A DNA stretch of 64,000 nucleotides. It comes from Setoptus koraiensis (lineage: Eukaryota; Animalia; Arthropoda). How positions within the stretch are numbered: the first letter of the stretch is position 1; every line of letters begins with the position of its first letter. The notes under the pieces were generated by a model, which was given only the letters and a program-made list of their open reading frames with translations, had not been told where the DNA came from and searched no databases. Below, one piece after another: positions 22,092-48,477 of this stretch. The DNA is taken from positions 9,610,001 to 9,674,000 of the forward strand of contig CM106585.1 in assembly GCA_048013815.1 (NCBI GenBank), read 5' to 3'. Both the position numbers and the translations under genes were made by a program.

Positions 22092-24254
22092 GAGACGCAA
22101 CACAAGCAGCGCCAGCACCCTATAATGGCCCTGCGATTGCATTATTATCATTTGTGTGTGTGTTGCGTAATCCGTGATTATTCACAACAATGATAATGAG
22201 TCGATTTTGTATCGCCGGCCGTCTCGCCAACTGCGGCCGCGCCGGGGCTCGTTGCGACGGCCGTCGTTGGCGTGGTTGTTGTGGCCGCTGTTGCAGTTGT
22301 TGCTGTCGTTGTTGCTGTTGCTGTCGTTGTTGCTGTCGTTGTTGCTGTCGGCCGGTACAGGTGGCTGACGGCGGGCATAAGTTGCGGCCGGCGATTTGCA
22401 AACAACTTCATTCAATCATGTCAGTGCCAGCGCGGCAGCAACTTGTTAGATCTGGCCAGCCCAATGGTCTCAATGAACTCATTAGACTTACTTGCGCGGC
22501 TCGAGCCGCGGCCGGACCCGCTTACGGCCGCGCTCACAACAATGCCGCTCGGCGCGCCGCGCCGAGCACAATGCCGCCCGGCGATGCTATCTCTGGCCTC
22601 GCATCTCGGCCGACCGTCGCACAGCCCGACCGGCCGTCTCGTATGTCCGGTCGCGCAGCCCGAGTGGCCGCTCGCGGCCGACCGACACATAGGAGTCGTA
22701 TGATACGACTGGCATGATACGAGACGCGAGCGCGATGTTGTGTGTTTGTACAATATGTATTATGTGCGCTTGTAATTATTTATGGCCAACTGGCTGGCAT
22801 GGATCGCCGGCCGGCCGGCCGGCTCACAGTCAGCGACTGGAATGAGCGAGCCCCATTTCAGTCACTGGCCGCTGACCAATGCGGCGGCCAGCATGCAAAC
22901 AAGAGCTCGCACAAGCACACAACGAACAGGCGAGCATGCAAACAAACGGATAAACAGACGAGCGAACGGATAAACGCAAGCGAGCAGCCGAACGGATAAA
23001 CGCGGCGACAGGACAGAGTGACTGGAAAGTGATTGCGTAACCACAAACAACAACGCTTATGCTTTATGGCTGTTCGAGAGGTGGCAATAATCGTAAATCT
23101 TGTCTAAACCTCGTGTCGTCTCTTACGCCAAACTATCCATTTCTGCGTGCCGTCTCGTCGTGCCTTCATTGTCTGTTGTTATCGGTTGTCGGTGGTTGTC
23201 GGTGTCGTTGCCTCTTGTCGCTGTTGTGCGTTGTCGCTGTTGTGCGTTGTCGCTGTTGTGTGTTGTTGCTGTTGTGTGTTGTTGCTGTTGTGTGTTGTTG
23301 CTGTTGTGTGTTGTTGCTGGTGTCGCTGCAGCGACACCAGCAACAACAAGTCGCCGCTATCCGTGATTGCGCCACAGCGCGCCACCAAGTGTCGACGCAG
23401 CGATCTTGTCGGCGGCTCGGTGAGCCTCACGCTCGACACATACGCACGGCAGCAACAACAGCAACATCAACAACAGCAACGACAACATCAACAACAGCAA
23501 CGACAGCAACAACAACAGCAACAACAGCAACGACAGCAACAACAACAACGACGACGACCAGCACATATCCACGCATGAACACATATACGTTACATGGCCA
23601 ATAGATGGGCGCCCCATTTCGGCTTGCGCGCCAGTCAACAGCAGCCAGTGGTGCTGACCCGCAATTGTTGTTGGCCGCAACAAACTGGCAGCCAGCCAGT
23701 GGCCAGTGGCCAGTGGTCAGTGGTCACAAGTCGGCTAATGGCGCACGCCGGCCAGCAAAGGTCGTAAATTGGCACAATAAAAGTCAACTTTTTGCCCATT
23801 ATCGCTGCCAACAGGAGAGCCATTGAACAATATGGCCATGGCATATGTATATTGGGATTGGTGCACATTGCAGGAGATGGTGCGATAGTCGCTGCTCTCG
23901 ACAACAAACCCGCAACTCGGCTTGGTCAGTTGGTCGGCAGTTTGTCCGCTCGCCGGCCCGTCGGCTGGTCGGGTTGCAGCGGCGCCGAGCCGAGCCAGCG
24001 TGCAACGCGCAAACCAACACGGCCAATATATAACAACGCGATATATAACAATATACGATACGACAAATGGCTCGGGTCGCGCTGTTACGCAACGACCATG
24101 CAGGCGAAATAACTCGCTCACACGATGAGCTGTTACGACGAGAGTCTCATAATGAGACGCAAGAGTCTCGCGAGACTGATGATAACTTAACTTGAAAACC
24201 TTGAATGATAACGTGATAACTTGGAAAGAGTTGCAAGATAAGAGGTGCACTCAC

Positions 24255-25623
24255 CTGGATGACGCGCATGTTGAGGCCCGTCTCCTGGGCCAATTGCTCG
24301 CGCGTGTGCCTAGTGGGCTTTGGCGTGGAGGTGAAAGCCGCTTTGAGCGTCTCCAATTGTTTCGGTTTGATTGTGGTGCGCGGGCCCCTGCGCTTGCCGC
24401 AAACGTCCACCTCGTCTTGCGAGTCGCCCATGGAGCCGGCGGCCAGCGTTGCGCCCGAATTGGGCCAGTAGTTGTTGTTGTTGTTGTTGTTTTGATTGTT
24501 GTTGTCGCTCAGCTGTTGCTGCTGATTGCTGGCTTCCGGTGGCTGCTGGTGGCCAGCGCTTGTCACCACCTGTTGTTGTTGTTGCTGGTGTTGCTGTTGT
24601 TGTTGTTGATGGTTGCTATTGGCCAGTGCGGCCAAGTGATAGGCGCCCCCGGACGAGGACAACAGTAACGACGATGTGGGCGACGATGAGCGCGACAACG
24701 GGCCCCCTATCGATGAGCTAACCGGTGACGATATTGTGTGCGACGATGAACTAGATGAGGCGCGCGATTGAGAATTGGCCGGCGAGCTGATGGAGCGAGC
24801 GGGCGACGGCGTTGCCAGCTGATCGGTTTGGTCGCCCGTTGCAAGTTGATCATTTATCGCCGACTCTAGCGCGCTTGTTGGGGCGCCCGATAGGTGCAAT
24901 TGTTGTCGTTTGTTGTCAAGTTGTTGTTGTTGTTGTTTCACATTGGTCTTGATGGTGGCGGCTTTGGTGACGCTGGCGGGCGACGACGTAACGGTTGTGG
25001 CCGTTGTTGTGGTGCTCGCTGCCGCTTGTGTTTCTGTTGCTGGCGACGATGTCGGTGTTGATTTGGCTTGCTGTTGCACTTGTTGTTGTTGTTGTTTGTC
25101 TTGTGCCTCCGCTTCTTTGCTGTCTGCTGCTGCTGCTTGTTTGTTTGTTGACGACGAGCTCGACAACAGCGACCCCTGTTGCTCCATCGGCTGAGGCTCG
25201 CCCTTGATGGCGGTCGAGCTGCCGTTGTCCAGGTTGGCGCTGCTGCTGCTGCTGTTGTCGTTTGGGGCCAGCTTAGAGGCCGATTGGTTCGAGGTGAACA
25301 GCGAATTTGAGGACGACCACGACAGCGACACGGACGACGCCGTCGACGACGACGACGCCGGCTGACCGTTGGCCGGCGTCTCTTGCTTGACGTTGGCCGT
25401 CGTGTTGTTATTGCACAATGCCTGCTGCTGCTGCTTCAGGTAGTCTTTTTTACAGAGGAATTTCTTGTTCTCGAACAGATACAATTGTTCGCCGATTTTC
25501 AGCGGCTCCTGGCACACGGAACAGAGGAAACAATTTGCATGGAATATGTTGTCTCTGACTCGTTGCACAAAGTCCGTCGGCTCAATCAATCGGCAACAAT
25601 TTGAACATTTTGGCCCGAAGCGG
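24255..25623 (-). CDS. Lim1: Lim1/Lhx1-5 coding exon 2 (LIM2, long S/Q/T/N-rich linker, homeodomain up to the middle of helix 3)
   Basis: Encodes LIM2 ([61 protein letters not shown]). Also encodes [47 protein letters not shown], which is diagnostic of the Lhx1/5 homeodomain. Ends at CAG|GTGAGT (phase 0), a common homeobox intron position. Confidence 0.94.
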
Positions 25624-25820
25624 CTGCAATCGGGTGCGTCGATTTCGTCATTGTGATGGGGGATTTGAGCGATTTCGGGGATTCGAGCGGTTCGAGCGAT
25701 TTGAGCGAGTGTTAGAGAGATACAGATACGAGTCAGATACAGAAAAGTGCTCTAGAGTGGGGCTACCAGATGCACGATAATATATGCGATTATGCATGCG
25801 ATAACGCATACGAGACTCAC
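25624..25820 (-). other. Lim1: Lim1 intron 1 (197 nt, GT-AG)
   Basis: Donor GTGAGT at 25820 and acceptor TTGCAG at 25624. Splicing gives in-frame ...[16 protein letters not shown]..., joining LIM1 to LIM2. Confidence 0.88.
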
Positions 25821-26002
25821 CTATAATAGTGGTTGCGACAGTAGATTTTGCCCTCGCGCGAAAAACATTTCTCCCTGAGCCGCGTTGAACAATCAATACA
25901 CTTTACACAATCTTGGTGCCACGATCTGTCTATAACAGAGAATATGAAACGCTCCGTTATAGGGCGATTGCAACCGGCGCAAATGGTGGCAAACATGGTC
26001 AT
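25821..26002 (-). CDS. Lim1: LIM-homeobox protein Lim1/Lhx1-5, coding exon 1 (LIM domain 1)
   Basis: Translation MTMFATICAGCNRPITERFIFSVIDRSWHQDCVKCIDCSTRLREKCFSREGKIYCRNHYY is a complete LIM double zinc finger of the Lhx1/5 type (CAGC..WH..C..C..C..EKCFSREGK.YC). It ends at a consensus donor AG|GTGAGT (phase 2). Confidence 0.93.
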
Positions 26003-26949
26003 CTTGGTTTGGTTAACTAATTAATAACTGCTACTGCTTATGCTGATTAGATTAACTCGCTCTTCATTTATGACTTTGATTTTGGTCACTTGGTAACGAT
26101 TCGGCTCGATTCGGCTCGGTTCTGGTCGATGCCAGGCGGCGCTGCTTGACGTTGCGAGCTGCTGCTAATTGGCTGAGCGGCTGTCGGCGGTTGTCGTTGT
26201 TGGTTGCGATCTCGACCACAATGGGTGCGCGCTGGCTCTAACTGGCTGCATCAATTTTTGTCGGTATATGTGCCAGTATCATCACTGCTGTTGCTGCTGA
26301 TGTTGTTGTTGCTGTTGTTGTTGTTGTTGCTTCTTTAGGGGATAATTCACAACTAACACTGGTCTGTCAACAATATAGAGATCTCTCTCGCGTTTGCGTC
26401 GACCATTTGTTTTGTCCATTCGAGCTGGCCGGAGTTCGGGAGCGCATGCGCTGTCCGCCACCAAGAGCGTTCGGAAGAACGATTGCGCGCGCCATCTGTT
26501 GGCAGGGCACCGCAAGGCCAGCTTGCAGCTTGAATTTGGCGCTCGCGCATCCCTGATTATGCGCTCTACGGTGAAGCAAGTGCACATCTGTGCTCATTAT
26601 CCATCAGATTAGATGCCATTATCAGTCAGTTGTGTGTGCGTGTGTTTGTAGCACAGTTATTGTATAATATGTGTGTATAAAGTACACAACGCAAACGGCA
26701 AAAACAGGCACAGAAATCGCCGTACACAGTACAATGAAAAAGTCAGATTAGACACTCAGATATGTCGGCATAATAAAATTAGCCTCACTATTATTATTAT
26801 TATTATTATCACTATTATTATTATTTGTATTTATATCATATATGTACTAACACAGAACCATTTCTGAAGCAGCATTATACATATTTTCACTAACCACTTA
26901 CACATCTATCACTTGACATTGTCCCAGCGCCTCAAGACACCAGAACAAC
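26003..26949. promoter_or_regulatory. Divergent intergenic and 5' region shared by Lim1 (-) and msps (+)
   Basis: Lies between two head-to-head start codons at 26002 and 26950. Contains (TTG)n and (TTA)n tracts. Promoter function is inferred from position only. Confidence 0.5.
26888..26927 (+). other. Branch point and 3' splice site just upstream of the msps ATG (5' intron)
   Basis: CACTAAC at 26888-26894, then ...GACATTGTCCCAG ending at 26927, 22 nt before the ATG. An in-frame TGA lies at 26914-26916, upstream of the acceptor. Confidence 0.5.
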
Positions 26950-29900
26950 ATGTATCACACTGATCTTGTCGACGCTGTCGATATCTCCGCCAAGATACCG
27001 GCCAGCTTTTATACTCAGATGGAATCAAAAAAATGGGGCGAACGCAAAGAGGCTCTCGACAACATCGAGAAGCTCACCACGGCCCCAAAGATAGAATATT
27101 CAGAGCAACTGGGCGACCTGGTGCGAACACTAAAGAAAACTATTACCAAAGATAACAATATTGTGGTGGCCACATCGGCCGCAAAATGTTTGTGCCAATT
27201 AGCTCAAGGACTCAGGACAAAGTTCGCCCCACTATCGCACGGATGTTTGAGCATCACTTTTGAGAAATTCAAAGAAAAAAAGCCACAAGTCATCAGTGTT
27301 TTACGTGACACAGCTGATGCAATCTTTGTTTGCACAAATCTAGAGTCTATTCAAGATGACACTATTTCACATCTAGATAACAAAAATCCACAAATTAAAT
27401 CGGAACTATGCCTATTCCTGGCGCGCGCCTTCTCTAATCATTCGGAGCAACTGATGCAACACAAAAAAGTGATCAAACCCCTAGTGACAGCGCTTATAAA
27501 GACTCTTAGTGATATGGATCCAACAGTACGCGATACTTCAGCTCAGGCGCTTGGAACAATGATGAAGGCTCTGGGCGATCGCGTACTAATGCCTTTGCTT
27601 GCCGACTTGGAGGAACTTAAGATCAACAAAATCAAAGAGCATCGAGACAAAGCTGAGATAAGAAATTCGCAAAGTTCTGAATTAGCCGAAGCAAAGTCTT
27701 CGACTATCACCAACGGTGCCGCTACTGCAGATGCCGCTCAACCGGATGCCGGCAATGATGACGAAGGCGATGAGCCTGACATAGACCCATATGAACTCAT
27801 GGACGCAGTTGATATCTCTAATAAAATACCTGCTGGCTTTTATACTCAGATGGAATCCAAAAAATGGGGCGAACGCAAAGAGGCTCTTGACAACATTGAA
27901 AAAATCACGGCAGCGCCCAAAATAGAGTATTCAGAGCAACTGGGCGACCTGGTGCGAACACTAAAGAAAACTATTACCAAAGATAACAATATTGTGGTGG
28001 CCACATCGGCCGCCAAATGTTTGTGCCAATTAGCTCAAGGACTTAGAGCAAAATTTGCTCCCCTATCACACGGATGTTTGAGCATCACTTTTGAAAAGTT
28101 CAAAGAAAAAAAGCCACTAGTTGTTACCGTATTGCGAGACACTTCTGATGCAATCTTTGTATGCACCAATTTAGAAGCCATCCAGGAAGATATTACTACT
28201 AATCTTGATAACAAGAATCCACAAATCAAATCGGAACTATGCCTTTTCTTGGCGCGTGCATTCGCTAACCACCCCGAACAATTGTTGCAAAACAAAAAAG
28301 TGATCAAACCCCTAGTAACAGCGCTTATCAAGACTCTTAGTGATATGGATCCAACAGTACGCGATACTTCAGCTCAGGCGCTTGGAACAATGATGAAGGC
28401 ACTGAGTGATCGCGTACTAATGCCTTTGCTTGCCGACTTGGAGGAACTTAAGATCAAAAAAATAAAAGAGCATCGAGATAAAGCGCAGGTGAAAAATCTG
28501 CCTCGTTCTGTGTTGGTCGAGTCCAAGCCACCCGTAATGAAGGCGCCAACACAATCAGCACCAGTGGAACAAGTTAATCCGCCTCAGCAACTGCCCCAAC
28601 AGATACCCTCCTCTACTGCAACATTTGTAAGACCAAAGATGCGTCAAAAATTAGGCGCTGTCAAGTCAACTGGATATGGCCAGCAAGCACCAACTGCCGC
28701 TTCTTCCAATGTCAGCTCGTCATCTTCAACGGCCAGTGTCCCAACTACAGCTACAGTTAAACGAACAAATACTATTGTAAAGCATAGGTCTATGTTGCCG
28801 TCATCAGGTGGCATGAGTGGGTCCACTGCAAATATAGACAATCTAGCCCAGCAAATGAGCCAGGTTTCTATTGGCTCAACTATGACTAAAAGTTTACCTA
28901 AACCAGGGGGTTTGCCCAGTAGAACTAATTCAGGCCTAAGCGGTCGTTCTTTAGCTGCCAAAAAAGGATCATTGCCTGTCGCAAAACCAACATTTGCCCC
29001 GTCGCATCCTCCGCTGCAGGCCAATCAAAACACTATATCTTCCACACCTATAGCACCTGTCAACAATACGCAACATCAATTCAATACTGAAGAGTATAAA
29101 TCACCTCCTCAGCTAGAATTTAACAATCATAGCATGAATAATGAGCACTCGCATGAGCATAAGGATCCCGATGCAAATCTGAACAGAATTTTAGGTCTAT
29201 TGACCTCACAGAATACAAACCAAGCCCTCGAGGCCTTTCAGCAACTAGAGAATCTTCTGTCGCAATCAGAAACTCAGGAACTATTTATTAATCGTGTCGA
29301 TCAGGTAATTGGATTCTGTTCCAACCATCTGAGAGTGATCTATGAGACTCTTAAAGATGCTCGCCGGTTGAATCCATCAGCCACATTACCGTCGAACACA
29401 TCTATTAAATTTGTCAAGGCAGTATCAACCACTCTTATTGCCTTATTCAACTCCAGATCATTGGCTATGCTGGCCAGTCCGCTACCTCTAAGCGATTTAA
29501 TGAAACAAATATTCACGTTATTAGCATCTAGTCCAACAACACATGCGAATAATATCTCAGTCAATAACAATGGCCATATAAGTAACAATAGCGATATTCA
29601 TTTAAATACCAGTGTCAATTCTCCCAACTCTACTAAATACAGTATATATAACAATAGTGAAGACGAAGCTTCAGTTAACAAGAACCTTAACCTACTGGCA
29701 GCTTCTGCCATAAAAGCAGTGGATCCAACAACAATGCTATGCCTTCTAATCGGCCTACTAGTTGATAGTTTGCAAGTTTGCGTCAGCTCAGTTCATATTG
29801 CTACAAATGAATTGATCATGAAGGGACTCTGGCGAATGACACGGAAGATCGGGAGTGGATTTGGACAGTTGGATATAGAGCGAGTCTTAGCGGAAATCTA

Positions 29901-30144
29901 TTGTTTCATGGAAACTTTTCCTCCAAGTTACTGGAAGAGCGGAGAAAAGAGAGACGACACTCCAATGAAAACAATTAAAACGCTGATATACAGTCTAACC
30001 GAGTCCCTTGGAAACACAATATACAACTACATGGATACCGTGCCTAATGAATGTGAGATGCGAACGTATATCAAGAGAGCTCTGATACAATGCGAGAGAG
30101 AAAAGGCACAATCTCCTGTTCCAAAATTGATCGACGCAAGTTAA
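26950..30144 (+). CDS. msps: XMAP215/ch-TOG/Mini spindles family microtubule polymerase; reduced form with two TOG2-like domains, a basic linker and a C-terminal TOG6/TACC-binding domain
   Basis: 1064 aa uninterrupted ORF. Two copies of a TOG2-type HEAT array (DAVDIS.KIP..FYTQMESKKWGERKEAL...KDNNIVV...KFKEKKP...DNKNPQIK...DMDPTVRD). The C-terminal part (LIMKGLWRMTRKIG...DIERVLAEIYCFMETFP...PMKTIKTLIYSL) matches the ch-TOG C-terminal domain. Confidence 0.93.
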   Translation: MYHTDLVDAVDISAKIPASFYTQMESKKWGERKEALDNIEKLTTAPKIEYSEQLGDLVRTLKKTITKDNNIVVATSAAKCLCQLAQGLRTKFAPLSHGCLSITFEKFKEKKPQVISVLRDTADAIFVCTNLESIQDDTISHLDNKNPQIKSELCLFLARAFSNHSEQLMQHKKVIKPLVTALIKTLSDMDPTVRDTSAQALGTMMKALGDRVLMPLLADLEELKINKIKEHRDKAEIRNSQSSELAEAKSSTITNGAATADAAQPDAGNDDEGDEPDIDPYELMDAVDISNKIPAGFYTQMESKKWGERKEALDNIEKITAAPKIEYSEQLGDLVRTLKKTITKDNNIVVATSAAKCLCQLAQGLRAKFAPLSHGCLSITFEKFKEKKPLVVTVLRDTSDAIFVCTNLEAIQEDITTNLDNKNPQIKSELCLFLARAFANHPEQLLQNKKVIKPLVTALIKTLSDMDPTVRDTSAQALGTMMKALSDRVLMPLLADLEELKIKKIKEHRDKAQVKNLPRSVLVESKPPVMKAPTQSAPVEQVNPPQQLPQQIPSSTATFVRPKMRQKLGAVKSTGYGQQAPTAASSNVSSSSSTASVPTTATVKRTNTIVKHRSMLPSSGGMSGSTANIDNLAQQMSQVSIGSTMTKSLPKPGGLPSRTNSGLSGRSLAAKKGSLPVAKPTFAPSHPPLQANQNTISSTPIAPVNNTQHQFNTEEYKSPPQLEFNNHSMNNEHSHEHKDPDANLNRILGLLTSQNTNQALEAFQQLENLLSQSETQELFINRVDQVIGFCSNHLRVIYETLKDARRLNPSATLPSNTSIKFVKAVSTTLIALFNSRSLAMLASPLPLSDLMKQIFTLLASSPTTHANNISVNNNGHISNNSDIHLNTSVNSPNSTKYSIYNNSEDEASVNKNLNLLAASAIKAVDPTTMLCLLIGLLVDSLQVCVSSVHIATNELIMKGLWRMTRKIGSGFGQLDIERVLAEIYCFMETFPPSYWKSGEKRDDTPMKTIKTLIYSLTESLGNTIYNYMDTVPNECEMRTYIKRALIQCEREKAQSPVPKLIDAS
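26965..28490 (+). repeat. Intragenic direct duplication of the TOG domain (about 26965-27655 and 27796-28486, offset 831 bp)
   Basis: The two copies align at a constant 831 bp offset. Identical tracts include 27097-27182 vs 27928-28013 and 27499-27569 vs 28330-28400. Confidence 0.95.
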
Positions 30145-30154
30145 TTTGTTTATA

Positions 30155-30832
30155 TTAGACATCCTTCAATAATTTGGGTCTTAAGCATTTTGCCATATTT
30201 GAAAAATTACAAGTAACACATTCGAATGGACAACATAAATGATTAAACTGGAATTCTTTACCATCGATGCCCAACTTGCATGTATCATCTACTGTGTTTG
30301 AGGTTCTGCCTAATTGGCCCTTTTTACTTTCTCTGATGACATTGAGACGTTTTCTAATGTTTTCCACAACCGGTTCCACGTCTACAATATCTGTCGAATC
30401 CATGCCATTCAGAGCCAGTACAATTCTAGCTTTGTTTCTATTGATATGCTTATCGGAAAGTATCTGGAATAAATATTCTGCTACTTGTTCACTCTCTTTG
30501 GGAAAATCCTTGAGGTTTACAAAGAACACTACCCTCGAGGTATCTTGGCGATGCAACTCGAAATGCTTGGTACGCAAATGGGCATCGCCAGGTATGTCTA
30601 CGACGTTGTACCCATTGATGGTGTGATTAATTTCATCAAGTGATGTGACAGTCTTAACATGAGTGTTTCCGAACACAAATCTCTGAAAAAATTGACTCTT
30701 TCCTGAGTTGCTGATTCCGGTCAGTAGAATTTTGTTTTTCTTCGCTGGTTTGAAGAATTTGAGATAGACCAAAACGAGTGAGATCAGTAGACACAAGAGT
30801 GTTAAATAATCCATTTCGGTTAGATTAAACAT
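30155..30832 (-). CDS. SRPRB: Signal recognition particle receptor subunit beta (SR-beta), copy 1
   Basis: 225 aa. N-terminal transmembrane anchor (LTLLCLLISLVLVYLKFF), then an Arf/Sar-like GTPase with G1 GISNSGKS, KTVTS, G3 DIPG and a G4-like NGMD. The C-terminus has LNVIRESK...LGIDGKEFQFNHL, typical of SR-beta. Confidence 0.88.
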   Translation of the reverse strand: MFNLTEMDYLTLLCLLISLVLVYLKFFKPAKKNKILLTGISNSGKSQFFQRFVFGNTHVKTVTSLDEINHTINGYNVVDIPGDAHLRTKHFELHRQDTSRVVFFVNLKDFPKESEQVAEYLFQILSDKHINRNKARIVLALNGMDSTDIVDVEPVVENIRKRLNVIRESKKGQLGRTSNTVDDTCKLGIDGKEFQFNHLCCPFECVTCNFSNMAKCLRPKLLKDV

Positions 30833-31434
30833 GATTACATCTGGATAAGAATGGGTTACTCATATAGGTATAATCTACTAGTAGACATGTGCACTTGTTT
30901 GCGAAATTCAATGTAAACAATGCTAACCAGCTCCCACAAGGAGGGTTGGATGTTTCGGAGAGGTGGGAGCTGGGAGATAAAACACCTCCCGTTCAACCTG
31001 GGTGAGTCTTGGCATCAGACGTGTCGAATTACCTAAGCATTATACTTCTAGCCTGATAAGAAAGAATTAGAATTATTAGCCTTATTTGAAAGCGATTTTG
31101 TTGGGGCAATCATACTGCTTTGTTTGTTTTCAATGTCCCATCAGGGAGGAGAGAGGTGGGAGATTGAAGATTGGATTTGGGAGGGGGAGGTCTCCCCTCG
31201 TTCGCTGAACTGCTACCAGATTTTGAAGTATGCGCCGTTTCCTTCGGAGAAAGATTTCTACTTTATTTGCACTCGAATACAAATAAAGTAGATTACATGA
31301 TGTAAATGTTGGTGCAACAGCCTAGCTTGTACCGAGAATGAACTCTAGTCCATCAGCACACAAAAATTGCTATATAAGTGACACTGGCACGCCATTTTAT
31401 CATCGATTCACAAGTCTCCCAATAAACTGTCAAA
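30833..31434. promoter_or_regulatory. Divergent promoter region between SRPRB copy 1 (-) and Gpdh1 (+)
   Basis: About 600 bp between head-to-head start codons. Function inferred from position. Confidence 0.55.
30841..31032 (-). other. Putative 5'-UTR intron of SRPRB copy 1 (192 nt)
   Basis: Minus-strand donor TAG|GTAATT at 31032 and acceptor CCATTCTTATCCAG at 30841, 8 nt upstream of the ATG. Size is similar to Lim1 intron 1. No transcript evidence. Confidence 0.4.
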
Positions 31435-32502
31435 ATGGAAAATCAAACACTCAAAGTAGCCATCATTGGATCGGGCAACTGGGGATCGGCCATTGCCAGG
31501 ATCGTCGGTGTCAACGTCAACAAGTTCGAGCATTTTCATCATGTCGTCAAGATGTACGTTTATGAGGAAATAGTTGAGGGCCAAAAATTAACAGAGATTA
31601 TCAACACCAAACACGAGAACGTCAAATATCTGAAGGGTTATCGTCTCCCCGACAATATAGTGGCTGTTCCCGATGTCTTAGAGACCGCTCAAGATGCCGA
31701 TGTTTTAATTTTTGTGGTGCCACACAAGTTCGTGCCTGGTTTGTGCAAGCCTTTAATAGGCAAAATAAAACCCAGTGCCATTGGTATCTCACTCATCAAG
31801 GGATTCGGGGAGGGACCTGGAGGCAGCTTCATCCTAATCTCTAATCAGATACAGCAATTGCTCGGCATCAAATGCTCTGTTTTGATGGGGGCTAACCTTG
31901 CCTCTGAGGTAGCGGAGGAGCAATTTTGTGAAACTACCATCGGTTGTAATGATGCCAAGTCAGGACAAGTTCTCAAGGACTTATTCAACAGCGAGAATTT
32001 CCGCGTTGCCGTAGTGCCCGACCGCTGCGCCGTCGAGGCTTGTGGCGCCCTAAAAAATATTGTCGCTTGCGCGGCCGGCTTTTCAGATGGGCTTGGTTGG
32101 GGCGCCAACACAAAATCGGCAATTATCAGAATCGGGTTGAAGGAGATGATTCGCTTTTGCCGCCTGTATTTTGTCGATGAGGACGAGCCACAACTGAGCA
32201 CCTTCTTTGAAAGTTGCGGTGTGGCCGATTTAATCACTACTTGTACAGGTGGTCGCAATAGGAGAGTTAGCGAACAGTTTGTCAAAAATCCAACAAAACC
32301 TCTGATAGAACTAGAGGAGGAACTACTCCAGGGCCAAAAGCTACAAGGACCACAGACCGCCCAGGAGGTTTACGAATTGTTGGAGAAACGCCAGCTGTTG
32401 GAATCATTCCCATTATTCGCCGGGACACACAAAATATTACTGCGCGAAATAGAACCAGAGGCCTTATTAGACTATCTACGTCTCGAGCCCGAGGATATGT
32501 AA
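31435..32502 (+). CDS. Gpdh1: Glycerol-3-phosphate dehydrogenase [NAD+], cytoplasmic; intronless
   Basis: 355 aa with Rossmann motif [12 protein letters not shown], then [27 protein letters not shown], catalytic GALKNIVA and [18 protein letters not shown]. Confidence 0.97.
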
Positions 32503-32545
32503 AGTGATTTTTTATATAGCTACAATAGCCAAACAGTAGATTTGT

Positions 32546-33214
32546 TTATATTATAATATGCGATAGGCACTTTGCCATGTCTGAGAAGTTACAAGTAACA
32601 CATTCGAATGGACAACATAAATGATTAAACTGGAATTCTTTACCATCGATGCCCAACTTGCATGTATCATCTACTGTGTTTGAGGTTCTGCCTAATTGGC
32701 CCTTTTTACTTTCTCTGATGACATTGAGACGTTTTCTAATGTTTTCCACAACCGGTTCCACGTCTACAATATCTGTCGAATCCATGCCATTCAGAGCCAG
32801 TACAATTCTAGCTTTGTTTCTATTGATATGCTTATCGGAAAGTATCTGGAATAAATATTCTGCTACTTGTTCACTCTCTTTGGGAAAATCCTTGAGGTTT
32901 ACAAAGAACACTACCCTCGAGGTATCTTGGCGATGCAACTCGAAATGCTTGGTACGCAAATGGGCATCGCCAGGTATGTCTACGACGTTGTACCCATTGA
33001 TGGTGTGATTAATTTCATCAAGTGATGTGACAGTCTTAACATGAGTGTTTCCGAACACAAATCTCTGAAAAAATTGACTCTTTCCTGAGTTGCTGATTCC
33101 GGTCAGTAGAATTTTGTTTTTCTTCGCTGGTTTGAAGAATTTGAAATAGACAAAAACGAGTGAGATCAGTAGACACAAGAGTGTTAAATAATCCATTTCG
33201 GTTAGAGTATACAT
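32546..33214 (-). CDS. SRPRB: Signal recognition particle receptor subunit beta (SR-beta), copy 2
   Basis: 222 aa from the ATG at 33214 (MYTLTEMDY...), homologous to the start of copy 1. Same motifs as copy 1, with a different C-terminal tail (CLSHIII vs CLRPKLLKDV). The ORF-track start at 33289 is probably too far upstream. Confidence 0.87.
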   Translation of the reverse strand: MYTLTEMDYLTLLCLLISLVFVYFKFFKPAKKNKILLTGISNSGKSQFFQRFVFGNTHVKTVTSLDEINHTINGYNVVDIPGDAHLRTKHFELHRQDTSRVVFFVNLKDFPKESEQVAEYLFQILSDKHINRNKARIVLALNGMDSTDIVDVEPVVENIRKRLNVIRESKKGQLGRTSNTVDDTCKLGIDGKEFQFNHLCCPFECVTCNFSDMAKCLSHIII

Positions 33215-36200
33215 GATTCCAATTAAATGACACGTGTAAATAGATAAATATAAATATCCGTTTGAAATTGGGTCAACTGATGCAGGCACCCATCTTCAGT
33301 AGAGCAAGCTGTATGGCGATTGTCTGAAATGTGAAACAAAATTTTGCGGGATATTCGAATGTGTTAGCATTGTTGCATAATGCAATTTGCAATGCATTTT
33401 TGAAACAGTGAGTATTCTGGCTCTGGATTGAACTGTCTTTCGGAATTTTTCTTACTTCAAGTTTCGCCTCGACAGCCAAGTATATGCAGGTAAGCATGAA
33501 AGAAAAATTCCGAAACAATCGGTTTTGGTGCATTGAAACAGAATCTCATGACAACAATTAGCATAGCAGCTATGAATCATTAGAAAATTTCAGAATTTTT
33601 AATAGTGACTGTACCTAGAATGTCAGGTAACTCACTTGTCGTTTGACAATGCGACATTGATGAGTCGCCTAACTTTATCGATGACTGACCGGATGGACCA
33701 AGTGACCACTTCGATATACTTTGATACTAATGGCATTCAATCGGTAGCATTATTCATGCATGTGCAACTGTAAACCACAGCGGTGTATGCATAGCGGTAG
33801 TTGTTAGAATGGTATTTGGTTGTTGTCGTTAATGATGTCACTGCCAATCTTGTTTATGTAGCACAGTGTTTGTCTCGGTGAGTGCCATGTACACTGACTG
33901 ACTCACTTGTTAATTAAACCTCATCGCCGCTAGCAAAGTTAATTAGTAGTTAGAGAAAAACGCGTCGCGTTTGCACTGAAATGCAATGCCTGTTGCGTCA
34001 TTTATTATCTGGCAGCTCTGTTGTTGTTATTGTTGTTGTTTGTCTTATAATAATAGAATGAATGAATAAAGAATAAAAACACAAACAAAATTGTCTTGGC
34101 ACAAATGACAACCATAGCGTTGCTTGGGCACCGAGCGAGTTGCAACCCTGTGAACACTAGCGCGTTCAACAAGATAAGGATAACGAGATAAAAATAACCA
34201 GCCATTGTGTGTGTCTATGCTAGTGTGTTCAACAACAAATATTAACAGCAACAAATATTAACAGCAACAAATATTAGCAACAACAAAGTAACAAACTAGC
34301 TGGATAGATAATAACTAGCGGCAGCGACAACAACAACAACAACAACAACAACAATGAGTGTGAGACGCCCCCGCGATAATTAGTGGCAAATGATGAATCA
34401 CTTTTGGCTTTCGAGTGCCACTCGATCTGGAAGTGCAAAACGCCAAGCGAGGCCAAGCGAAAATTCTATTAATCATCATCGTGCCTTCGTTGTTGTTGTT
34501 GTTGTTTGTTTGCTCTTTGTTCTCAGAAGCGAATCGCTTTCGTCTCGCGATTGTAACTGTTCCACTTTAAGTGCAAAACTAAAACTAGACCATCCGCTTC
34601 TCGAGCACAGTTATTAATATATATATCAGTTATACTGGCTGCACAAGAGCGCATAATTTTGAATCGTTGTCGTCACGGTTACACGGATGTCAGTGGATAC
34701 AGCCACAGGAACTAGATATGACGGCGCGCTGGAGCATGTGGACTTGAACTTGCCTCAATCATTGAGGCTCAATGTATCTCGCAAATGGCACACTCGCCTT
34801 GCACCTAGCGACCGTTTACTTGTCTGTTGTATTGGTTGTTGTTGTTGTTGCTGTGTTTGCTTGTTGCTCGATGACAAAACAACAACAATTTGGCGAGCAA
34901 GTTCTCGGCGTGCATGCAAGCGGCAACAATTATGGGGCCCCGAACGATTTGCGAGCATGCCAACGCGGCGTTGCACAACAGGGCGCTGTTGCTGGTTGCT
35001 CGTCCCTCTTGCTTACTGTTTCCGTTGCGTTTGCCGGAGCTGGCCCAAGTGCTCGAGTATGAGCCGTTGATAACGCGCATCTAAAATATACAGCCTAATT
35101 GTATACCATACAATCGCTAGGCATACAATCGCGCAACTATCGCTAGGCTACCTGTAGCAGATGACGCAACAGTTATGTGCTTCCAATGACAGTGGTCAGC
35201 AGGGCATCGATTTGTGCCAGCTGACCAGCGATGACAGGTCAAGTTGTAGCCGTTGAGCTGACGGCTTGTCACAAACAAACAACAATCGTCAGCTGATCAG
35301 GACATTAATTGATTGTTTCACTATCATCAAACTGAAGTGATCAAGACAGCGGCTGGCTGGCGGACTGGATATGATGTGATGTAATGTGTGATTGTGGGCG
35401 CTGACGAGGCACAAAAGCATAAAATGAATCTCTCATCCATCAAGTGGAGCGGATGAGTGGCGCTGCGAGCAGGCAGGCAATAGCCATATATCACGACGAT
35501 AATTCATATTGTTGTTGCTGTTTGCAGTGTTACAGTTTCGTGTTGTTTGCGCCGGCGTGCAGCATTGGAGGAAATGCAAGCTTGAACAAGTTTATGACAC
35601 ACATAAAAAGAATGACGACTTAGACTTTGTGAGACTTTGTCGAATAGCTGGCAGCGTGCAGTTTTAAATAGAGTGCACTACATTAAAATGTCTGACAAAT
35701 GTCACCCTTTGCAAGTGCGTTGGCTCGCGCTGCGCGTCGTCGTCGTCGTTGTTGTCGTTGTTGTCGTTGTCGGTTGGCGACAACACAGGCTGGCATCGGA
35801 GCGGCGAACAACGACCAAAACAACGACGGAAAGAACGAGCCTCGAGAGTGACATCATTGTGTTTATTAAATGGACAAGAGCGCATTGTTGGTTGCGGTGC
35901 ATCGAAAGGCGGCAGCGGCGGTTACAATCGCGGGCGCAAACAGTCGTGACATCATCGGCTAATTAATGGTTCGCTCGCTGGCGCGTTCTTGCCAACTTGG
36001 CTGGCTCCGTTACTGGGCCGCTCTGCGGCTCGCCTCGTATGCCAGCTCTGTCAGCGTAATCTGCTCGGCTAGCTGGCTGGCTGGCAGGCTGGCGAGACTG
36101 ACGAGCTAAACGCAAACGCTATCATGTTACGAGGCGCACAACACTAATGGCTGACACAAACGGGCCGACGACGACGACGACGACGACGACGGCGCTCTTG

Positions 36201-39200
36201 AACTAGATAACGGGACTGCCGGCTCATGTTGGCGCAATGTGTGCGATATGTTGGTTGGATGGGCCAACTTTTGCAGTTAATTATCTGACAATTGTGAGAG
36301 AGTCACAATAATAGGTTTATTGCCACTAGCGCAGGGCCGGGCCGGCTTAGCTCACAATCTTGTCAGTGTCGCCGGGCCGCTGATTAAGCGATTGAGCTCG
36401 CATCGAGCTAGCTGGTGAGGCAGCTAGCTGGCAGTCGCTAGTCGCTAGTTGTCGTTGTTGCGTCGCTCGTTGCTGTGGCATCATTAAAACATGTCGCTGC
36501 GTAGCCGTTGTTACGCCGTCGCTCGTTGTTTCGGGGCGAGCAGGAAGTTAATAAACAACGAGATTGAGGTCATTGAGCCTCGGCAGCGGCGGGCCTCCCT
36601 CAATCAATTACAATTAGTGGTGACATGTTTGGCTGACGGCGCGCCCATTCGGCGGCTCGCCGCCGCATATCGCACCGCCGGCATATCGCACCGAGGCACC
36701 CTCGACGCGATATCGATACCGTTGGATCGGCGTGCCGTTTCGACTTGATTTGCGTGCCGTCGGATTTGATTTGCAAAGCGCCGATTTGATTCGGCGGTGT
36801 CAGTGTCGGATTAGCGCTCTCAATTCAATAATATCCATTCAGTGCTGTTGAGTCGTCACTATTGAATCACAGTCAGTGAGCTAAAAATAACTTGTGCGCC
36901 TGTCGTTGGAACTGACAACGGATTAGAAAGGCGCGCGAGCCCTCGGGCAACGGATGTCGACCGGGCCGGCTCACAACTGTACGGCCCGATTGTACGGCTC
37001 GTTGGCTGAGCGATGGCGAGATAACACGAGCAAGTTATTAGCACCGTTTAGCTAGTGTTATGATTAACTTTACGAGTTTGTTGGGCTAGTTTGCATTGGG
37101 CCACGAGCAAGTGGCAACACGTTGATACGTTGGCACGTTGATACGTTAACACGTTGAGTCGGATGCGAGCGAGCACATTATAACAAACATGATATCATTA
37201 TGATATTAATAACGGGCTATTAATAGGCCATTGTGATGGCAAGCGAGCCGGCGCGGCACACCATTGAGCTGCTGAATGGGCTCAATGAACAGTCGAGCTG
37301 TCAGTGTGACAGCGCCAGAAACAGAGTGGGCCACACAATTGCCCCCGTTGTCCGCCGACTCGGCAGCGTTAGCTCGCCAGCTATCGCTCGCCAGCGTCGT
37401 GTCGACGGCGTCAACTCGACAGTGTCGACTCGACGGCGTCGGCTCAACAGTGTCGGCTGGCACCTGTTGCAGTGGCGCCGGCACGAAGGCGATAAATATA
37501 ACACAATAATAATGTGTAATTAATTGTAACAAACGCGCCTCATCGGCGGCCGGCTAAACGAGCGTATCAACTTGTTGGCTGCCAGTAACGGCACGCAACA
37601 AGTTAATGAGCTCGACGCGCGCGTATCGCTGCTCGCGAGCCTGCCTTACGTGAGCCCTGGCTCGTATTGTTGCTGGCGATCAAGGTGATTAGCGCGCGAC
37701 GCAAAGTGCTCGTTGGCCGTCGTTGGCTGTTGCTGTTTGCTAGCGGTTGCTCGCTGTTGTTGGCCGTTGCTGACGGTGCCAGCCCGTCAGCGCTGCCAGG
37801 CCAAAAACTGGAGAGGTGTGAGTAATGATAAATGTAAATTGAACTGAACTGAATTTATCATTGTTGCCCACAGACGAGCGCGCACGCGGGCGTAAGTCGC
37901 CCAGCTCACCTGTTGCCGCTGTCGTTCGCCAACAGCCAGCAACAACAGCCAACAACAACAGCCAACAACAACAGCCAACAACAACAACCAACAGCAACAG
38001 CAAACAGCCAACAACAACAAGCAACAGCGACAGCCAGAGCGACAGCCAGAGTTGCGCTGTCAGCTGTGAGAGCAGCCGACGCAACCACTGACGGCGACCA
38101 CCGTGTCGGCTCTGACAATTGTGAATGAGAGACTCGGATTCGCATCTTTGCCTGTTCGCATCCAGCTCGCACGAGCGACTCACTGACTTATCATGAGCCT
38201 GGCTTGGCGTAACTCGACGACTGTTGGCCAGAGGGCGCGTCCACTGTCGAGCCACTCATTAGCGCAAATGGTGAAAATATTAAAAATAAAACAAGAATCG
38301 CATTCGTAATCGGCGAGCTGTTGCGCATCGTTGTCGCACTGGCAACTTTGTCAACTTATCCATGCAAATGCACACTTATTTGCGTTTCCACTAATCGCGC
38401 CCGTACTCGCAATTATACTCACGCTCGCCTTTATATTAACGTTCGCCTCTATATTTATGCTCGCAATCATACTCGCAATCATAAACTTATGTGTGCTAAT
38501 GTGCGCAAAACGCGAAACAATCGGCCTGCCAACTGACAAATGGAAATGGTCGAGCTGCCAAGGTTGCGCCGAAGGGCTGACAAATCGCCGCATTGATGGC
38601 GGCGTCGCTCGGCTTAGCTGGCCGACTAATCGGGCATATCGCACATGACGCCTATTACATGGGTGCCTATTTGACCGATTGATCTTGACGACAAATAAGC
38701 CGGTCGGCGAAACGAGCGCCGGCGAGCTAGGCAAAAAAAATGAGAGGGCCGCCGAGCGAAAGTGAGCACAAATGATAGGGCTGGCGAAAGTGACTAGAGG
38801 CGCTTGCAGTGTAAGCCAGTGGAACGGGCAAACCTTGAACCTGGACTGTGCAGCCCACTTTGGACTAAGGCTGCTGCCAGCGGCCAACATTTGACGCTAT
38901 GACGCCAAATATCCGAAGCCTGGCACCGTGCACCAATTATGACACATATCGCCTGTGAGTCTAGACGCGCTATCGACGGCCATGATTGATGGTGGCTCTC
39001 GGAGCCGAGCGAAAGAGTTGCGTTGCGGGCGCCCCCGCACCACTGACACTGTCGCTGCCGATGTTGCCGCTGCTAATATCGCCGCTGCTCATATCGCCGC
39101 TGATATCACTGTCAGTGTGACTGTCGCTGTCAGGCCGCGCTCGCATGCGACGCCTCGATCGCTCGCTAAACGACTCTCGAGACACTCGCCCGTTCGCTGG

Positions 39201-42200: not shown

Positions 42201-42422
42201 TCACGCACATCGCACATCGTACACACGCACGCACACAGACACTGTCGATCGGTGAGATTGCACACGCATTCTGAGACTGCAGTGCGGTGCGACATGTCAC
42301 ACACAATTCGAATATCGGTGTCGCGCGTACAACACGTTACCACACTGCCAGTGGAGCGCTGACAGCATTATCTCGTTGCCACAACACACAACACAAGTGT
42401 GTGACACAAGTGACCAGACAGG

Positions 42423-42492
42423 CGAACCATTTGAATCGAACCATTTGAATCGAACCATTTGAATCGAACCATTTGAATCGAACCATTTGAGT
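42423..42492. repeat. 14-bp minisatellite (CGAACCATTTGAAT) x5
   Basis: Seen directly. Confidence 0.95.
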
Positions 42493-43353
42493 CATCGATG
42501 CGCAGTTACCAGTGCGGCCAACCAACCAGCGCAACCGGAGCCGGCAACAAGTTTATCCAAGTGTCCACACAATACGACCAAGCATTGAATTCAGCAGTGC
42601 AATTCAAAATTCAAACTCTGATTCAAATTTCAAATCGTGTGTGCATCGCAAACGCAAATAACGTATAATCGTGCAGTGTGTGCCATGCCAATAGCATAAT
42701 TAACGAGTGACTGCAGCGCCTAAGCGGCCCACCAAGAGTATCAAATGACTGCGCTGCACCAAACTTAAAAATGAAAAAAAAATGAAATCAGACATGAGCC
42801 ACAACACACATCCAGACAATCACCAGCGACTGCATAGTGAATAGACAGCCAAATCACAAGAGAGATATAGCATAGCTCAACTACATACGTTAACTGCGTG
42901 CCACAAACTATAGCTGTTGTGTGCGCGGATACAACGTCTTGAAATCGAAAACAAGAACACTCTTGCCACAGCGCAACGTGGCGCAGGCCGACACAAGTTG
43001 CAGCTGCACCGCGCCACCAGATTGTATCAGCGCGATTGTATCAGCGCGATTGTATCACGTAAGCGTGTCGTGTACACATAAGCGTGTCACTTTCTCATAT
43101 AGGCTTCACTTGTTGACTTACCCATCGTCTCTGCATTCGAGCATCACTTACCCATTTGGGGAGCATTGTTGAAACTGTTGCAAACCCATTATCGAACATT
43201 GTAACACAACGATTACTATCATTACACACACACAGCTCGTCCAATCGAACTTTTGATCGAGCCGACGCATTGATCCATCGGACTGTCGCTTGAGGCGCAC
43301 AAATCGCACAGTTTGGTGGCCGAGCGACGCACAACTCGTACGTTGCCGCCATT

Positions 43354-48153: not shown

Positions 48154-48477
48154 AATACTCATTTGTGTCAAAATGATTATGAATTATAGATAAATTTCTG
48201 AAGAGGGGAGGACACAATTGAATCACATCTTGATTGATTGGATTCAGAAGTATTTCGTCAATAACAAAACATCAGTAACAAAGAATCACTTTACTTGGAC
48301 AAATCGACCAATCTAAATTATTAGATGGTGAAGTTATACACTCTGGCATCTTCGTTCTAAGTTGTACAAACCATGAGAAATAACTTTAGCCATTTGATTT
48401 TATCTCTGTTTCCTCAGAGTGCTTAAGAACAAATCTTTCTTTTAACGAACAACAATTCATTTCAACTTATTAACCAA

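What the first reader, a model, noticed from the sequence alone, without database searches (positions are those of the whole stretch)
26950..30144. Reduced XMAP215/Msps made of two TOG2 copies plus the C-terminal domain, resembling nematode ZYG-9
Seen: the protein starts directly with a TOG2-type domain, repeats it, and then has a basic S/T/K/P linker and the C-terminal TOG6/TACC-binding domain. No TOG1, TOG3, TOG4 or TOG5 is present in the ORF or in any upstream ORF in the window. The tubulin-contacting loops (KKW, KDNN, KEKK, NKNP, DPTVRD) are intact in both copies. Established: animal and plant XMAP215 proteins have five TOGs and yeast Stu2 has two. C. elegans ZYG-9 has three, with the first two TOG2-like, and it also begins at a TOG2-like domain. 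Inference: an independent reduction followed by TOG2 duplication, going further than ZYG-9 by also lacking TOG5. This would be a natural minimal polymerase. An upstream splice acceptor means a coding 5' exon cannot be excluded.
Basis: partly seen in the sequence, partly recalled or inferred. Interest (0 to 1): 0.8.

Follow-up and report, generated by a model that had tools for sequence, protein, structure and literature searches.

The report
Two-TOG2 XMAP215 of an eriophyoid-type mite
A tiny plant-mite-type genome encodes a stripped-down microtubule-growth factor with two copies of one tubulin-binding domain, a basic linker and one C-terminal domain, an architecture that resembles versions engineered in yeast and shows how little of this normally large protein may be needed.

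Summary
Window 26950-30144 (+) is one intact 1064-codon ORF. It encodes TOG2 - acidic spacer - TOG2 - basic S/T/P linker (net +13) - TOG6.

- **No other TOG coding sequence:** none lies anywhere in the 64 kb.
- **Both TOGs are TOG2-type:** the TOG1/TOG2 split has 100/100 support, and an AU test rejects a TOG1 origin of the first copy (p 8e-27).
- **Both copies are under purifying selection:** dN/dS is 0.10.

- The host is not an insect. It is an early-branching eriophyoid-type acariform mite, where intronless genes are the norm.
- The direct ancestor was probably a three-TOG protein, not a five-TOG one. All named acariform mites have TOG1-TOG2-TOG5.
- The C-terminal domain is TOG6. The four-helix bundle and the helix that bind TACC are absent.

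Four to five other eriophyoid species from metagenomes share the TOG2-TOG2 layout and also lack the second half of TOG6. The likeness to nematode ZYG-9 is convergent.

Two points stay open: whether this is the genome's only XMAP215 gene, and whether it is expressed. The one read-laying run gave nothing usable.

The scan had not noted this elsewhere. Verdict: a real, conserved new variant of a known family, of moderate to high interest.

The parts
26950..30144 (+). Whole ORF, 1064 codons plus stop, no intron: reduced XMAP215/Msps-family protein
26914..26916 (+). In-frame TGA stop 36 nt upstream of the ATG.
26950..27684 (+). TOG2 copy a (residues 1-245). The Met sits exactly where the TOG2 homology unit begins.
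27685..27783 (+). Acidic inter-TOG spacer (residues 246-278, pI 4.05), predicted disordered
27784..28515 (+). TOG2 copy b (residues 279-522), 277 residues (831 nt) downstream of copy a
28516..29154 (+). Basic S/T/P-rich linker (residues 523-735, pI 10.4, net +12 to +13), predicted disordered with no coiled coil; candidate microtubule-lattice-binding region
28750..28791 (+). Basic motif inside the linker (residues 601-614, ATVKRT.TI.K.RS) that is conserved in the eriophyoid orthologues
29155..30141 (+). TOG6-type C-terminal helical-repeat domain (residues about 736-1050) plus a 14-19 residue end. No four-helix bundle or TACC-binding helix follows.
29533..29655 (+). N/S-rich low-complexity insertion loop inside TOG6 (residues about 862-902, pLDDT below 50)

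Best explanation
The ORF is a real gene under selection. It is the XMAP215/Msps/ZYG-9-family microtubule polymerase of an early-branching eriophyoid-type mite, cut down to TOG2 - TOG2 - basic linker - TOG6.

Proposed history (inferred from trees and architectures):
- The acariform ancestor already had a three-TOG protein: TOG1-TOG2-basic linker-TOG5-TOG6-tail.
- In the eriophyoid stem, TOG1 was replaced by a tandem copy of TOG2. The repeat unit is 277 aa.
- TOG5 and the C-terminal four-helix-bundle/TACC-binding tail were deleted.
- The two TOG2 copies have since been partly homogenised by gene conversion in some lineages.

Proposed mechanism (inferred from the family's biochemistry, not tested here):
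- Each TOG2 captures one curved alpha-beta-tubulin dimer through its conserved Trp and Arg loops.
- The adjacent basic linker holds the protein on the negatively charged lattice near the plus end.
- The tethered tubulins are then delivered to the growing end, as in Stu2. An engineered Stu2 TOG2-TOG2 and a monomeric two-TOG Stu2 with enough basic charge are both active polymerases.
- TOG6 may keep a link to gamma-tubulin/gamma-TuRC for nucleation.
- Recruitment through TACC is probably lost, or is made in another way.

It is most likely, though not shown, the only XMAP215 gene of this genome.
For: Gene reality:
- The ORF is intact over 1064 codons.
- dN/dS between the two copies is 0.10, with dS 0.63.
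- The same TOG2-TOG2 layout occurs in proteins P0001, P0003, P0004 and P0121/P0002, from independent metagenome and SRA assemblies.

Domain identity:
- Best PDB hit for both copies is Msps TOG2.
- Domain trees place both copies in the TOG2 clade at 100/100. The AU test against a TOG1 origin gives p 8e-27.
- TOG6 is supported by sequence and by fold.

Taxon:
- The neighbouring Gpdh is sister to a 38-sequence clade that contains Aceria tosichella.
- P0001's organism carries a Gpdh of that clade in the same samples at the same coverage, about 625x.
- The genome is assembled in two pieces, the one that holds the window at least 19 Mb long. I recall a haploid number of 2 for eriophyoids; the paper read here says only that their chromosomes are few.

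Descent from the acariform gene:
- TOG2 and TOG6 both nest within Acariformes (94/82 and 99/99) and lie outside Trombidiformes, as the species does in the Gpdh tree.
- The basic post-TOG2 linker (+13 to +19) is shared with all acariform homologues.

Ancestral three-TOG state: Halotydeus, Dinothrombium, Leptotrombidium, Oppia, Tetranychus, Brevipalpus and D. farinae all have it.

Gene conversion: the window's a and b copies pair, and so do E4's. In E1, E3 and E121 the b copies group apart from the a copies. Nucleotide identity per 60 nt is patchy, from 73% to 100%.

Mechanistic plausibility:
- The Trp and Arg determinants are described in PMC4145800.
- TOG6 binds gamma-tubulin/gamma-TuRC (PMC13376574).

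Single copy (weak evidence only):
- No other TOG sequence lies in the window.
- No TOG, CLASP or XMAP215 note exists in 256 scanned windows of this genome.
- All unnamed acariform-type hits that carry TOG1 or TOG5 group with Trombidiformes, not with this clade.
Against: - **No expression evidence:** four RNA runs gave no reads on the ORF, and no RNA-Seq run was listed as holding it. Those runs carry a species label that holds only 37-63% of the DNA words. They may be a host or another organism, so the blank says little.
- **No whole-genome search:** the assembly could not be searched, so a canonical three-TOG paralogue elsewhere is not excluded.
- **Long branches:** the clade sits on rather long branches (TOG2 stem 0.41+0.29; TOG6 branch 2.47). 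That pattern also fits a fast-evolving extra paralogue.
- **No shared synteny:** the window has LIM-homeobox and SRPRB-Gpdh as neighbours, while the E loci have MTP-PK and TRM10-SURF1.
- **Loss of TOG5 has a cost:** in flies it lowers polymerisation rates (9.8 against 12.3 um/min; PMC5461023), and TOG5 matters for nucleation (PMC13376574). A protein without it may be a weak polymerase.
- **No biochemical activity was tested.**
Confidence: 0.62

Rival explanations
1. It is an extra, fast-evolving paralogue, for example specific to the germline or meiosis. It would sit beside a canonical acariform TOG1-TOG2-TOG5-TOG6 gene elsewhere in the genome, so it is neither the minimal nor the sole polymerase.
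For: - The branches are long.
- The window and the eriophyoid E loci share no synteny.
- There is no expression evidence.
- The genome could not be searched.
- The neighbours are a duplicated SRPRB-Gpdh-SRPRB cassette, so the region has a history of duplication.
Against: - XMAP215 is single-copy in most animals (my own knowledge, not tested here).
- TOG2 and TOG6 take the position expected for the species, not that of a recent duplicate.
- The database holds at least 38 eriophyoid-type Gpdh sequences. Yet two very large protein searches found no eriophyoid-like protein with TOG1 or TOG5. All such unnamed hits fall in Trombidiformes.
- Notes on 256 windows of this genome mention no other TOG gene.
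Confidence: 0.27
2. The gene model is incomplete. One or more upstream coding exons, such as a TOG1, are spliced onto the AG acceptor 23 nt before the ATG.
For: An AG at 26926-26927 lies between the in-frame stop and the ATG, and the frame is open from there. The neighbouring LIM-homeobox gene shows that this genome does have introns.
Against: - tblastn finds no TOG-like sequence in the 27 kb upstream or anywhere else in the window.
- All five orthologues that reach their 5' end start with Met at the same homologous position, the first residues of the TOG2 unit. In-frame stops lie 15-45 nt upstream in the two loci checked.
- The upstream neighbour is a convergent-free, oppositely oriented LIM-homeobox gene ending at 26002.
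Confidence: 0.05
3. It is a decaying relic or an assembly artefact, such as a collapsed or falsely duplicated TOG2.
For: Other first-stage notes on this genome report many 'reduced' genes. The TOG6 branch is very long.
Against: - The reading frame is open for 3.2 kb.
- dN/dS between the copies is 0.10.
- The copies differ at 14% of nucleotides, so they are not an assembly duplicate.
- The same layout appears in independent assemblies of other species.
- The most conserved TOG6 motifs are retained.
Confidence: 0.03

Closest known systems
C. elegans ZYG-9 (XMAP215 family, trimeric TOG array)
   Same: The first two TOGs are both of TOG2 type (PMC5461023). The protein starts at a TOG2-like domain, lacks TOG3 and TOG4, and has a TOG6-type domain (PMC13376574).
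   Different: ZYG-9 keeps the TOG5-like lattice-binding TOG3 and a tail of about 180 aa after TOG6 that holds the bundle and TAC-1-binding region. This protein has neither. The TOG2 duplications arose independently in the two lineages. The ZYG-9 post-TOG2 linker is not basic (net -3 to -5), whereas this one is +13.
Acariform-mite XMAP215 (e.g. Tetranychus urticae CKAP5-A, Halotydeus destructor CKAP5, Oppia nitens 'mini spindles-like')
   Same: These are the closest named relatives by TOG2 and TOG6 trees. They share the basic linker after TOG2 and lack TOG3 and TOG4.
   Different: They have a true TOG1, a TOG5-type third TOG and a 180-255 aa tail after TOG6, for a total of 1490-1700 aa.
Unnamed eupodine-like mite proteins P0250/P0251/P0253/P0385/P0387/P0388
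   Same: They have two TOGs, a basic linker and TOG6 with no TOG5. The genes are intronless and lie on compact contigs.
   Different: Their first TOG is a genuine TOG1 and most keep the tail. They are sister to Halotydeus inside Trombidiformes, so their loss of TOG5 was independent.
Yeast Stu2/Alp14 and the engineered Stu2(TOG2-TOG2) and monomeric Stu2-deltaCC-2xBasic
   Same: They have two TOGs followed directly by a basic region. The engineered all-TOG2 and monomeric versions are active polymerases (PMC5999394). The Trp and Arg tubulin contacts are conserved.
   Different: The yeast proteins dimerise through a coiled coil and have no TOG6. Here no coiled coil is predicted and a TOG6 is present.
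Drosophila Msps / human ch-TOG / Xenopus XMAP215
   Same: TOG2 is about 55% identical to Msps TOG2. The TOG6 fold matches.
   Different: Those proteins have TOG1-5, TOG6, the four-helix bundle and the H5 TACC3-binding helix, in about 2030-2065 aa.

Membership tests
XMAP215/Dis1/Stu2/Msps family | N-terminal array of XMAP215-type TOG domains (six HEAT-like repeats each) | tested here: met
   Pfam PF21041 matches twice. Best PDB hit is Msps TOG2, E 5e-68, for each copy. AF2 predicts two helical-repeat modules.
XMAP215/Dis1/Stu2/Msps family | Conserved tubulin-contact residues in the intra-HEAT loops (Trp of HR A, basic residues of HR B-D, Arg equivalent to Stu2 R200/R519) | tested here: met
   Columns invariant across 17 TOG2 sequences, including both window copies: W28, K65/D66, K104-K108, N142-P145, R191. 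Supported by alignments to Msps and Alp14 TOG2. Residue roles come from PMC4145800.
XMAP215/Dis1/Stu2/Msps family | Basic lattice-binding region next to a TOG | tested here: met
   The linker at residues 523-735 has pI 10.4 and net +12 to +13, comparable to other acariform homologues. Microtubule binding itself was not tested.
XMAP215/Dis1/Stu2/Msps family | Microtubule polymerase activity | not testable with these tools
   This needs a TIRF assay or cell rescue.
Animal/plant XMAP215 subtype (hexameric TOG array) | TOG1, TOG3 and TOG4 present | tested here: not met
   The domain tree and AU test place both TOGs in TOG2. tblastn finds no other TOG in 64 kb.
Animal/plant XMAP215 subtype (hexameric TOG array) | TOG5 (lattice-binding TOG with HR0) | tested here: not met
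   No TOG lies between TOG2b and TOG6. The linker is predicted disordered.
Animal/plant XMAP215 subtype (hexameric TOG array) | TOG6 C-terminal domain | tested here: met
   BLASTP to CKAP5 residues 1272-1532 gives E 2e-20. AF2 model has pLDDT 84.6. Foldseek TM is 0.69-0.71 to XMAP215 1567-1832, ch-TOG 1535-1806 and Msps 1600-1870.
Animal/plant XMAP215 subtype (hexameric TOG array) | Four-helix bundle plus H5 helix that binds TACC3/D-TACC/TAC-1 | tested here: not met
   The ORF ends 14-19 residues after TOG6. Tails of Halotydeus, Oppia and P0253 find no match in the window beyond TOG6. The element is defined in PMC11921806.
ZYG-9-type trimeric array | TOG2-like, TOG2-like, then TOG5-like domain | tested here: not met
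   The first two domains fit. The third, TOG5-like domain is absent.
Fungal Stu2/Alp14 type | TOG1-TOG2-basic region-coiled-coil homodimer | tested here: not met
   No TOG1 is present. AF2 predicts no helix in residues 523-737. The oligomeric state itself was not tested.

The most novel reading that the evidence does not exclude
This TOG2-TOG2-basic-TOG6 protein is the only XMAP215-family gene of eriophyoid-type mites. In core eriophyoids it is even smaller, with half of TOG6 gone. If so, an animal lineage would build spindles with a monomeric polymerase that has two same-class TOGs, no lattice-binding TOG5 and no TACC tether. That would be a natural counterpart of the engineered minimal Stu2 variants. 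It would also be a second, independent case, after nematodes, of TOG1 being overwritten by TOG2 in a miniaturised, worm-shaped animal.
Probability: 0.55. Interest if true: 0.72.

Novelty: new variant of a known kind. Interest (0 to 1): 0.6.

Why it matters
The field treats the five- or six-TOG array as the animal standard and calls ZYG-9 'a notable exception' (PMC5461023). The data here point to a graded natural series within one arachnid lineage:
- five TOGs in ticks, spiders and scorpions;
- TOG1-2-5 in all named acariform mites;
- TOG1-2 in a eupodine-like group;
- TOG2-2 in eriophoid-type mites, with TOG6 then halved in core eriophyoids.

This offers natural test proteins for three questions:
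- which domains are needed for polymerase activity as opposed to nucleation;
- whether a basic linker can replace TOG5;
- whether centrosomal or spindle recruitment can work without the TACC-binding tail.

It also fits the genome-wide protein miniaturisation that other first-stage notes on this genome report. If a canonical paralogue exists, the finding shrinks to a lineage-specific duplicate.

Tried and rejected
1. **Fly retrogene.** My starting idea was a retrogene of msps in a fly. I dropped it when the Gpdh neighbour and the homologues pointed to acariform mites, where intronless genes are normal.
2. **Read laying.** Reads were laid on four RNA runs of 'organism A'. Only CAG-repeat artefacts at 25.1-25.3 kb were laid and nothing fell on the ORF. 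The label may be a host or a relative, so the blank is uninformative. The second run search listed no holder.
3. **Metagenome scan with a TOG2 alignment.** The aim was to see whether samples that hold the eriophyoid gene also hold a canonical TOG2. No conclusion is possible.
4. **Sample matching.** I compared the samples of the TOG1-TOG2 'two25x' proteins with those of the E-group. No sample was shared, and the trees place them in Trombidiformes, so they are not eriophyoid paralogues.
5. **Aculops genome paper.** A search of its text and 200 supplementary files for msps, XMAP215 or CKAP5 returned only chance strings.
6. **ESM Atlas look-up.** It returned generic XMAP215 clusters and gave no taxon.
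7. **Scan notes by sequence and by words.** No other TOG note exists in this genome.
8. **Downstream exon in E-group loci.** A search for the missing half of TOG6 found none.
9. **Bacterial-type promoter and terminator scan.** It is not meaningful for a eukaryote and was ignored.
Full report
**1. What is there**

Window 26950-30144 (+) is a single uninterrupted ORF of 1064 codons. An in-frame TGA lies 36 nt upstream, at 26914-26916.

Pfam finds two XMAP215/CLASP-type TOG domains. The two copies are 83% identical over 260 residues. Over the 245-residue core they are 87% identical in protein and 86% in DNA.

Each copy taken alone has Drosophila Msps TOG2 (PDB 2qk2) as its best solved-structure match, at E about 5e-68. 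The next matches are Alp14 and Stu2 TOG2.

An alignment of 17 TOG2 domains includes canonical ones from mites, a tick, krill and a butterfly. Both window copies keep every invariant loop residue in it. These include the HR-A tryptophan and the arginine that correspond to Stu2 W341 and R519, the residues shown to contact tubulin (PMC4145800).

The rest of the protein has four segments:
- residues 246-278 are an acidic spacer;
- residues 523-735 are a basic linker with pI 10.4, net charge +12 to +13 and 36% S/T/P;
- residues about 736-1050 align to the C-terminal conserved domain of CKAP5 (E 2e-20);
- only 14-19 residues follow that domain before the stop.

An AlphaFold model of the C-terminal domain, built on a 25-sequence alignment, has mean pLDDT 84.6. 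Its best structural matches are the TOG6 segments of XMAP215 (1567-1832), ch-TOG (1535-1806), Msps (1600-1870), MOR1 and ZYG-9, with TM 0.62-0.71.

A full-length model shows three folded modules joined by disordered segments. The linker has no helix and no coiled coil.

tblastn with seven full-length family members finds nothing in the 64 kb outside 26917-30090.

**2. Which TOG types**

A tree of 97 TOG domains resolves five clean clades, TOG1 to TOG5. A careful tree of the first two TOGs of 37 proteins separates TOG1 from TOG2 at 100/100. Both window TOGs lie in the TOG2 clade.

Forcing the first TOG of this protein and of its orthologues into the TOG1 clade costs 199.7 log-likelihood units (AU p 8e-27).

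Nematode ZYG-9 TOG1 and TOG2 also both lie inside the TOG2 clade, as a nematode-only group (100/99). This agrees with Byrnes & Slep, who call ZYG-9 'TOG2-TOG2-TOG5-like' (PMC5461023). The mite pair nests inside mite TOG2 sequences, so the two duplications are independent.

**3. Whose genome**

I first read the intronless ORF as a fly retrogene. The evidence points elsewhere:
- The neighbouring Gpdh ORF has its closest named hits in acariform mites: Aceria tosichella 74%, Dinothrombium 67%, Tetranychus 66%.
- In a tree, that Gpdh is sister (98) to a 38-sequence clade that contains Aceria, an eriophyid. It lies apart from both Trombidiformes and Sarcoptiformes.
- The genome is in two pieces, the one that holds the window at least 19 Mb long. 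From memory, eriophyoids have a haploid number of 2; the Aculops paper says only that their chromosomes are few and very small.

Eriophyoid genomes are known for massive intron loss (PMC7738191). Intronlessness is therefore not evidence for retroposition here.

**4. It is a gene family, not a one-off**

The best database hits are unnamed proteins of 827-868 aa: P0001, P0002/P0121, P0003 and P0004. They are 39-51% identical to the window protein and have the same TOG2 - spacer - TOG2 - basic linker layout.

They lie on compact, intron-poor contigs with conserved neighbours, MTP-PK-[gene]-...-SURF1.

P0001's organism carries a Gpdh (P0127) of the Aceria clade. It occurs in the same samples at the same coverage, 622x against 628x. 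These proteins are therefore eriophyoid.

All of them start with Met at the same homologous position as the window protein, and in-frame stops lie 15-45 nt upstream. Together with the empty 27 kb upstream, this argues against a hidden 5' coding exon. The AG at 26926-26927 means a 5'-UTR intron stays possible.

These core-eriophyoid proteins end in the middle of TOG6, and no downstream exon supplies the rest. They lack the most conserved TOG6 motifs, which the window protein keeps.

**5. The ancestral state**

- All named acariform mites have three TOGs (TOG1, TOG2 and a TOG5-type domain), then TOG6 and a 180-255 aa tail, for a total of 1490-1700 aa. This holds for Halotydeus, Dinothrombium, Leptotrombidium, Oppia, Tetranychus, Brevipalpus and D. 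farinae.
- Scorpion, spider and ticks have five TOGs.
- A salmon louse and a tardigrade also show the three-TOG layout.
- An unnamed group sister to Halotydeus (P0250, P0251, P0253, P0385, P0387, P0388) has TOG1-TOG2-basic linker-TOG6 with no TOG5. It has its own conserved synteny, AP-sigma upstream and an acetyltransferase downstream.

The reduction seen in the window therefore started from a ZYG-9-like three-TOG protein, not a five-TOG one. TOG5 was lost at least twice in mites.

Two features tie the window gene to the acariform gene:
- The strongly basic linker after TOG2 (+13 to +19) is common to all acariform forms and to the window protein.
- The window's TOG2 pair and its TOG6 both nest within Acariformes (94/82 and 99/99) and outside Trombidiformes, as the species does.

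This is what descent from the acariform XMAP215 gene predicts.

**6. Duplication and concerted evolution**

The repeat unit is 277 residues: TOG2 plus about 32 residues of what follows it. The tree gives a mixed picture:
- in E1, E3 and E121 the second copies group together, apart from the first copies;
- in E4 and in the window the two copies pair with each other.

Nucleotide identity between the window's copies swings from 73% to 100% per 60 nt.

The simplest reading is one old duplication followed by gene conversion in some lineages. Independent duplications are not excluded.

dN/dS between the copies is 0.10, with dS 0.63. Both copies are therefore under purifying selection.

**7. What is missing, and what that implies**

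- TACC3 binds helix H5 (ch-TOG 1932-1945), which follows a four-helix bundle (1817-1957) lying after TOG6 (1517-1802) (PMC11921806).
- The window protein stops right after TOG6. Tails of related mite proteins find nothing further in the window. The convergent SRPRB gene ends 10 nt away.

**8. How it most likely works (inference)**

Two tubulin-binding TOG2 domains next to a basic region are the minimum that Stu2 needs. [quoted passage not shown] A monomeric two-TOG Stu2 is active once its basic region carries enough charge (PMC5999394).

I therefore expect a tethered-delivery polymerase. Each TOG2 would hold one curved tubulin dimer, and the linker would hold the protein on the lattice. TOG6 possibly keeps a gamma-TuRC link in this species.

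In fly cells, loss of TOG5 lowers the polymerisation rate. Activity here may therefore be modest, which could be enough for very small cells.

**9. What stays open**

I could not search the rest of the genome, so a canonical paralogue cannot be excluded. Only weak evidence speaks against one:
- notes on 256 windows of this genome mention no other TOG gene;
- all unnamed acariform-type hits that carry TOG1 or TOG5 are trombidiform.

Expression is also untested. The one read-laying run used runs whose species label holds only part of the sequence, and it gave nothing on the ORF. No RNA-Seq run was listed as holding it.

**10. Verdict**

This is a real, conserved and selected gene. It is a new architectural variant of the XMAP215 family, convergent with ZYG-9 in its TOG2 pair and more reduced than ZYG-9.

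No paper in the searched library links XMAP215 TOG arrays with mites.

I estimate about 0.55-0.6 probability that it is the sole family member in this genome. Interest is 0.6.

Noticed in passing
window 1-24000, 33300-43300, 48200-64000: These are long stretches of 55-63% GC. Their 'ORFs' overlap on both strands and have no Pfam family. The recognisable genes at 26950-33289 sit in a 41-45% GC island. This is unusually gene-poor for a mite lineage known for compact genomes.
   Followed up: partly
window 43354-48153 (+): A 1599-aa ORF with no Pfam family lies in a region of strong AT and GC skew. It may be a low-complexity or repetitive secreted protein.
   Followed up: no
window 30155-33289: An SRPRB - Gpdh - SRPRB cassette holds two near-identical intronless SRPRB copies on the minus strand, flanking an intronless Gpdh. 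The first SRPRB ends 10 nt after the stop of the TOG gene. The Gpdh sits on a longer branch than other eriophoid Gpdh sequences.
   Followed up: partly
window 24147-26002 (-): The upstream neighbour is a LIM-homeobox gene with at least one intron (LIM1 exon 25817-26002; LIM2, poly-Q and homeodomain exon 24147-25589). RNA reads laid at 25.1-25.3 kb were CAG-repeat artefacts from another transcript.
   Followed up: partly
proteins P0386, P0389, P0390, P0391, P0408, P0252, P0045, P0056, P0073: All named acariform mites, plus a salmon louse and a tardigrade, have a ZYG-9-like three-TOG XMAP215 (TOG1-TOG2-TOG5-TOG6-tail). The literature calls ZYG-9 'a notable exception'. The louse and tardigrade models were not checked against their genomes.
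   Followed up: partly
loci L007, L008, L062-L066 (proteins P0250/P0383, P0253, P0387, P0424, P0388): A group of unnamed, intron-poor mites sister to Halotydeus has TOG1-TOG2-basic linker-TOG6 without TOG5. Its synteny is conserved, with AP-sigma upstream and an acetyltransferase downstream. This is a second, independent loss of TOG5.
   Followed up: partly
loci L001-L006, L011 (proteins P0001, P0121): Core-eriophyoid orthologues end in the middle of TOG6, and no downstream exon supplies the rest. They lack the most conserved TOG6 motifs, which the window protein keeps.
   Followed up: yes
window 28750-28791: The short basic motif ATVKRT.TI.K.RS in the otherwise variable linker is invariant across the window protein and the eriophyoid orthologues. 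It could be a lattice-binding or phospho-regulated patch.
   Followed up: no
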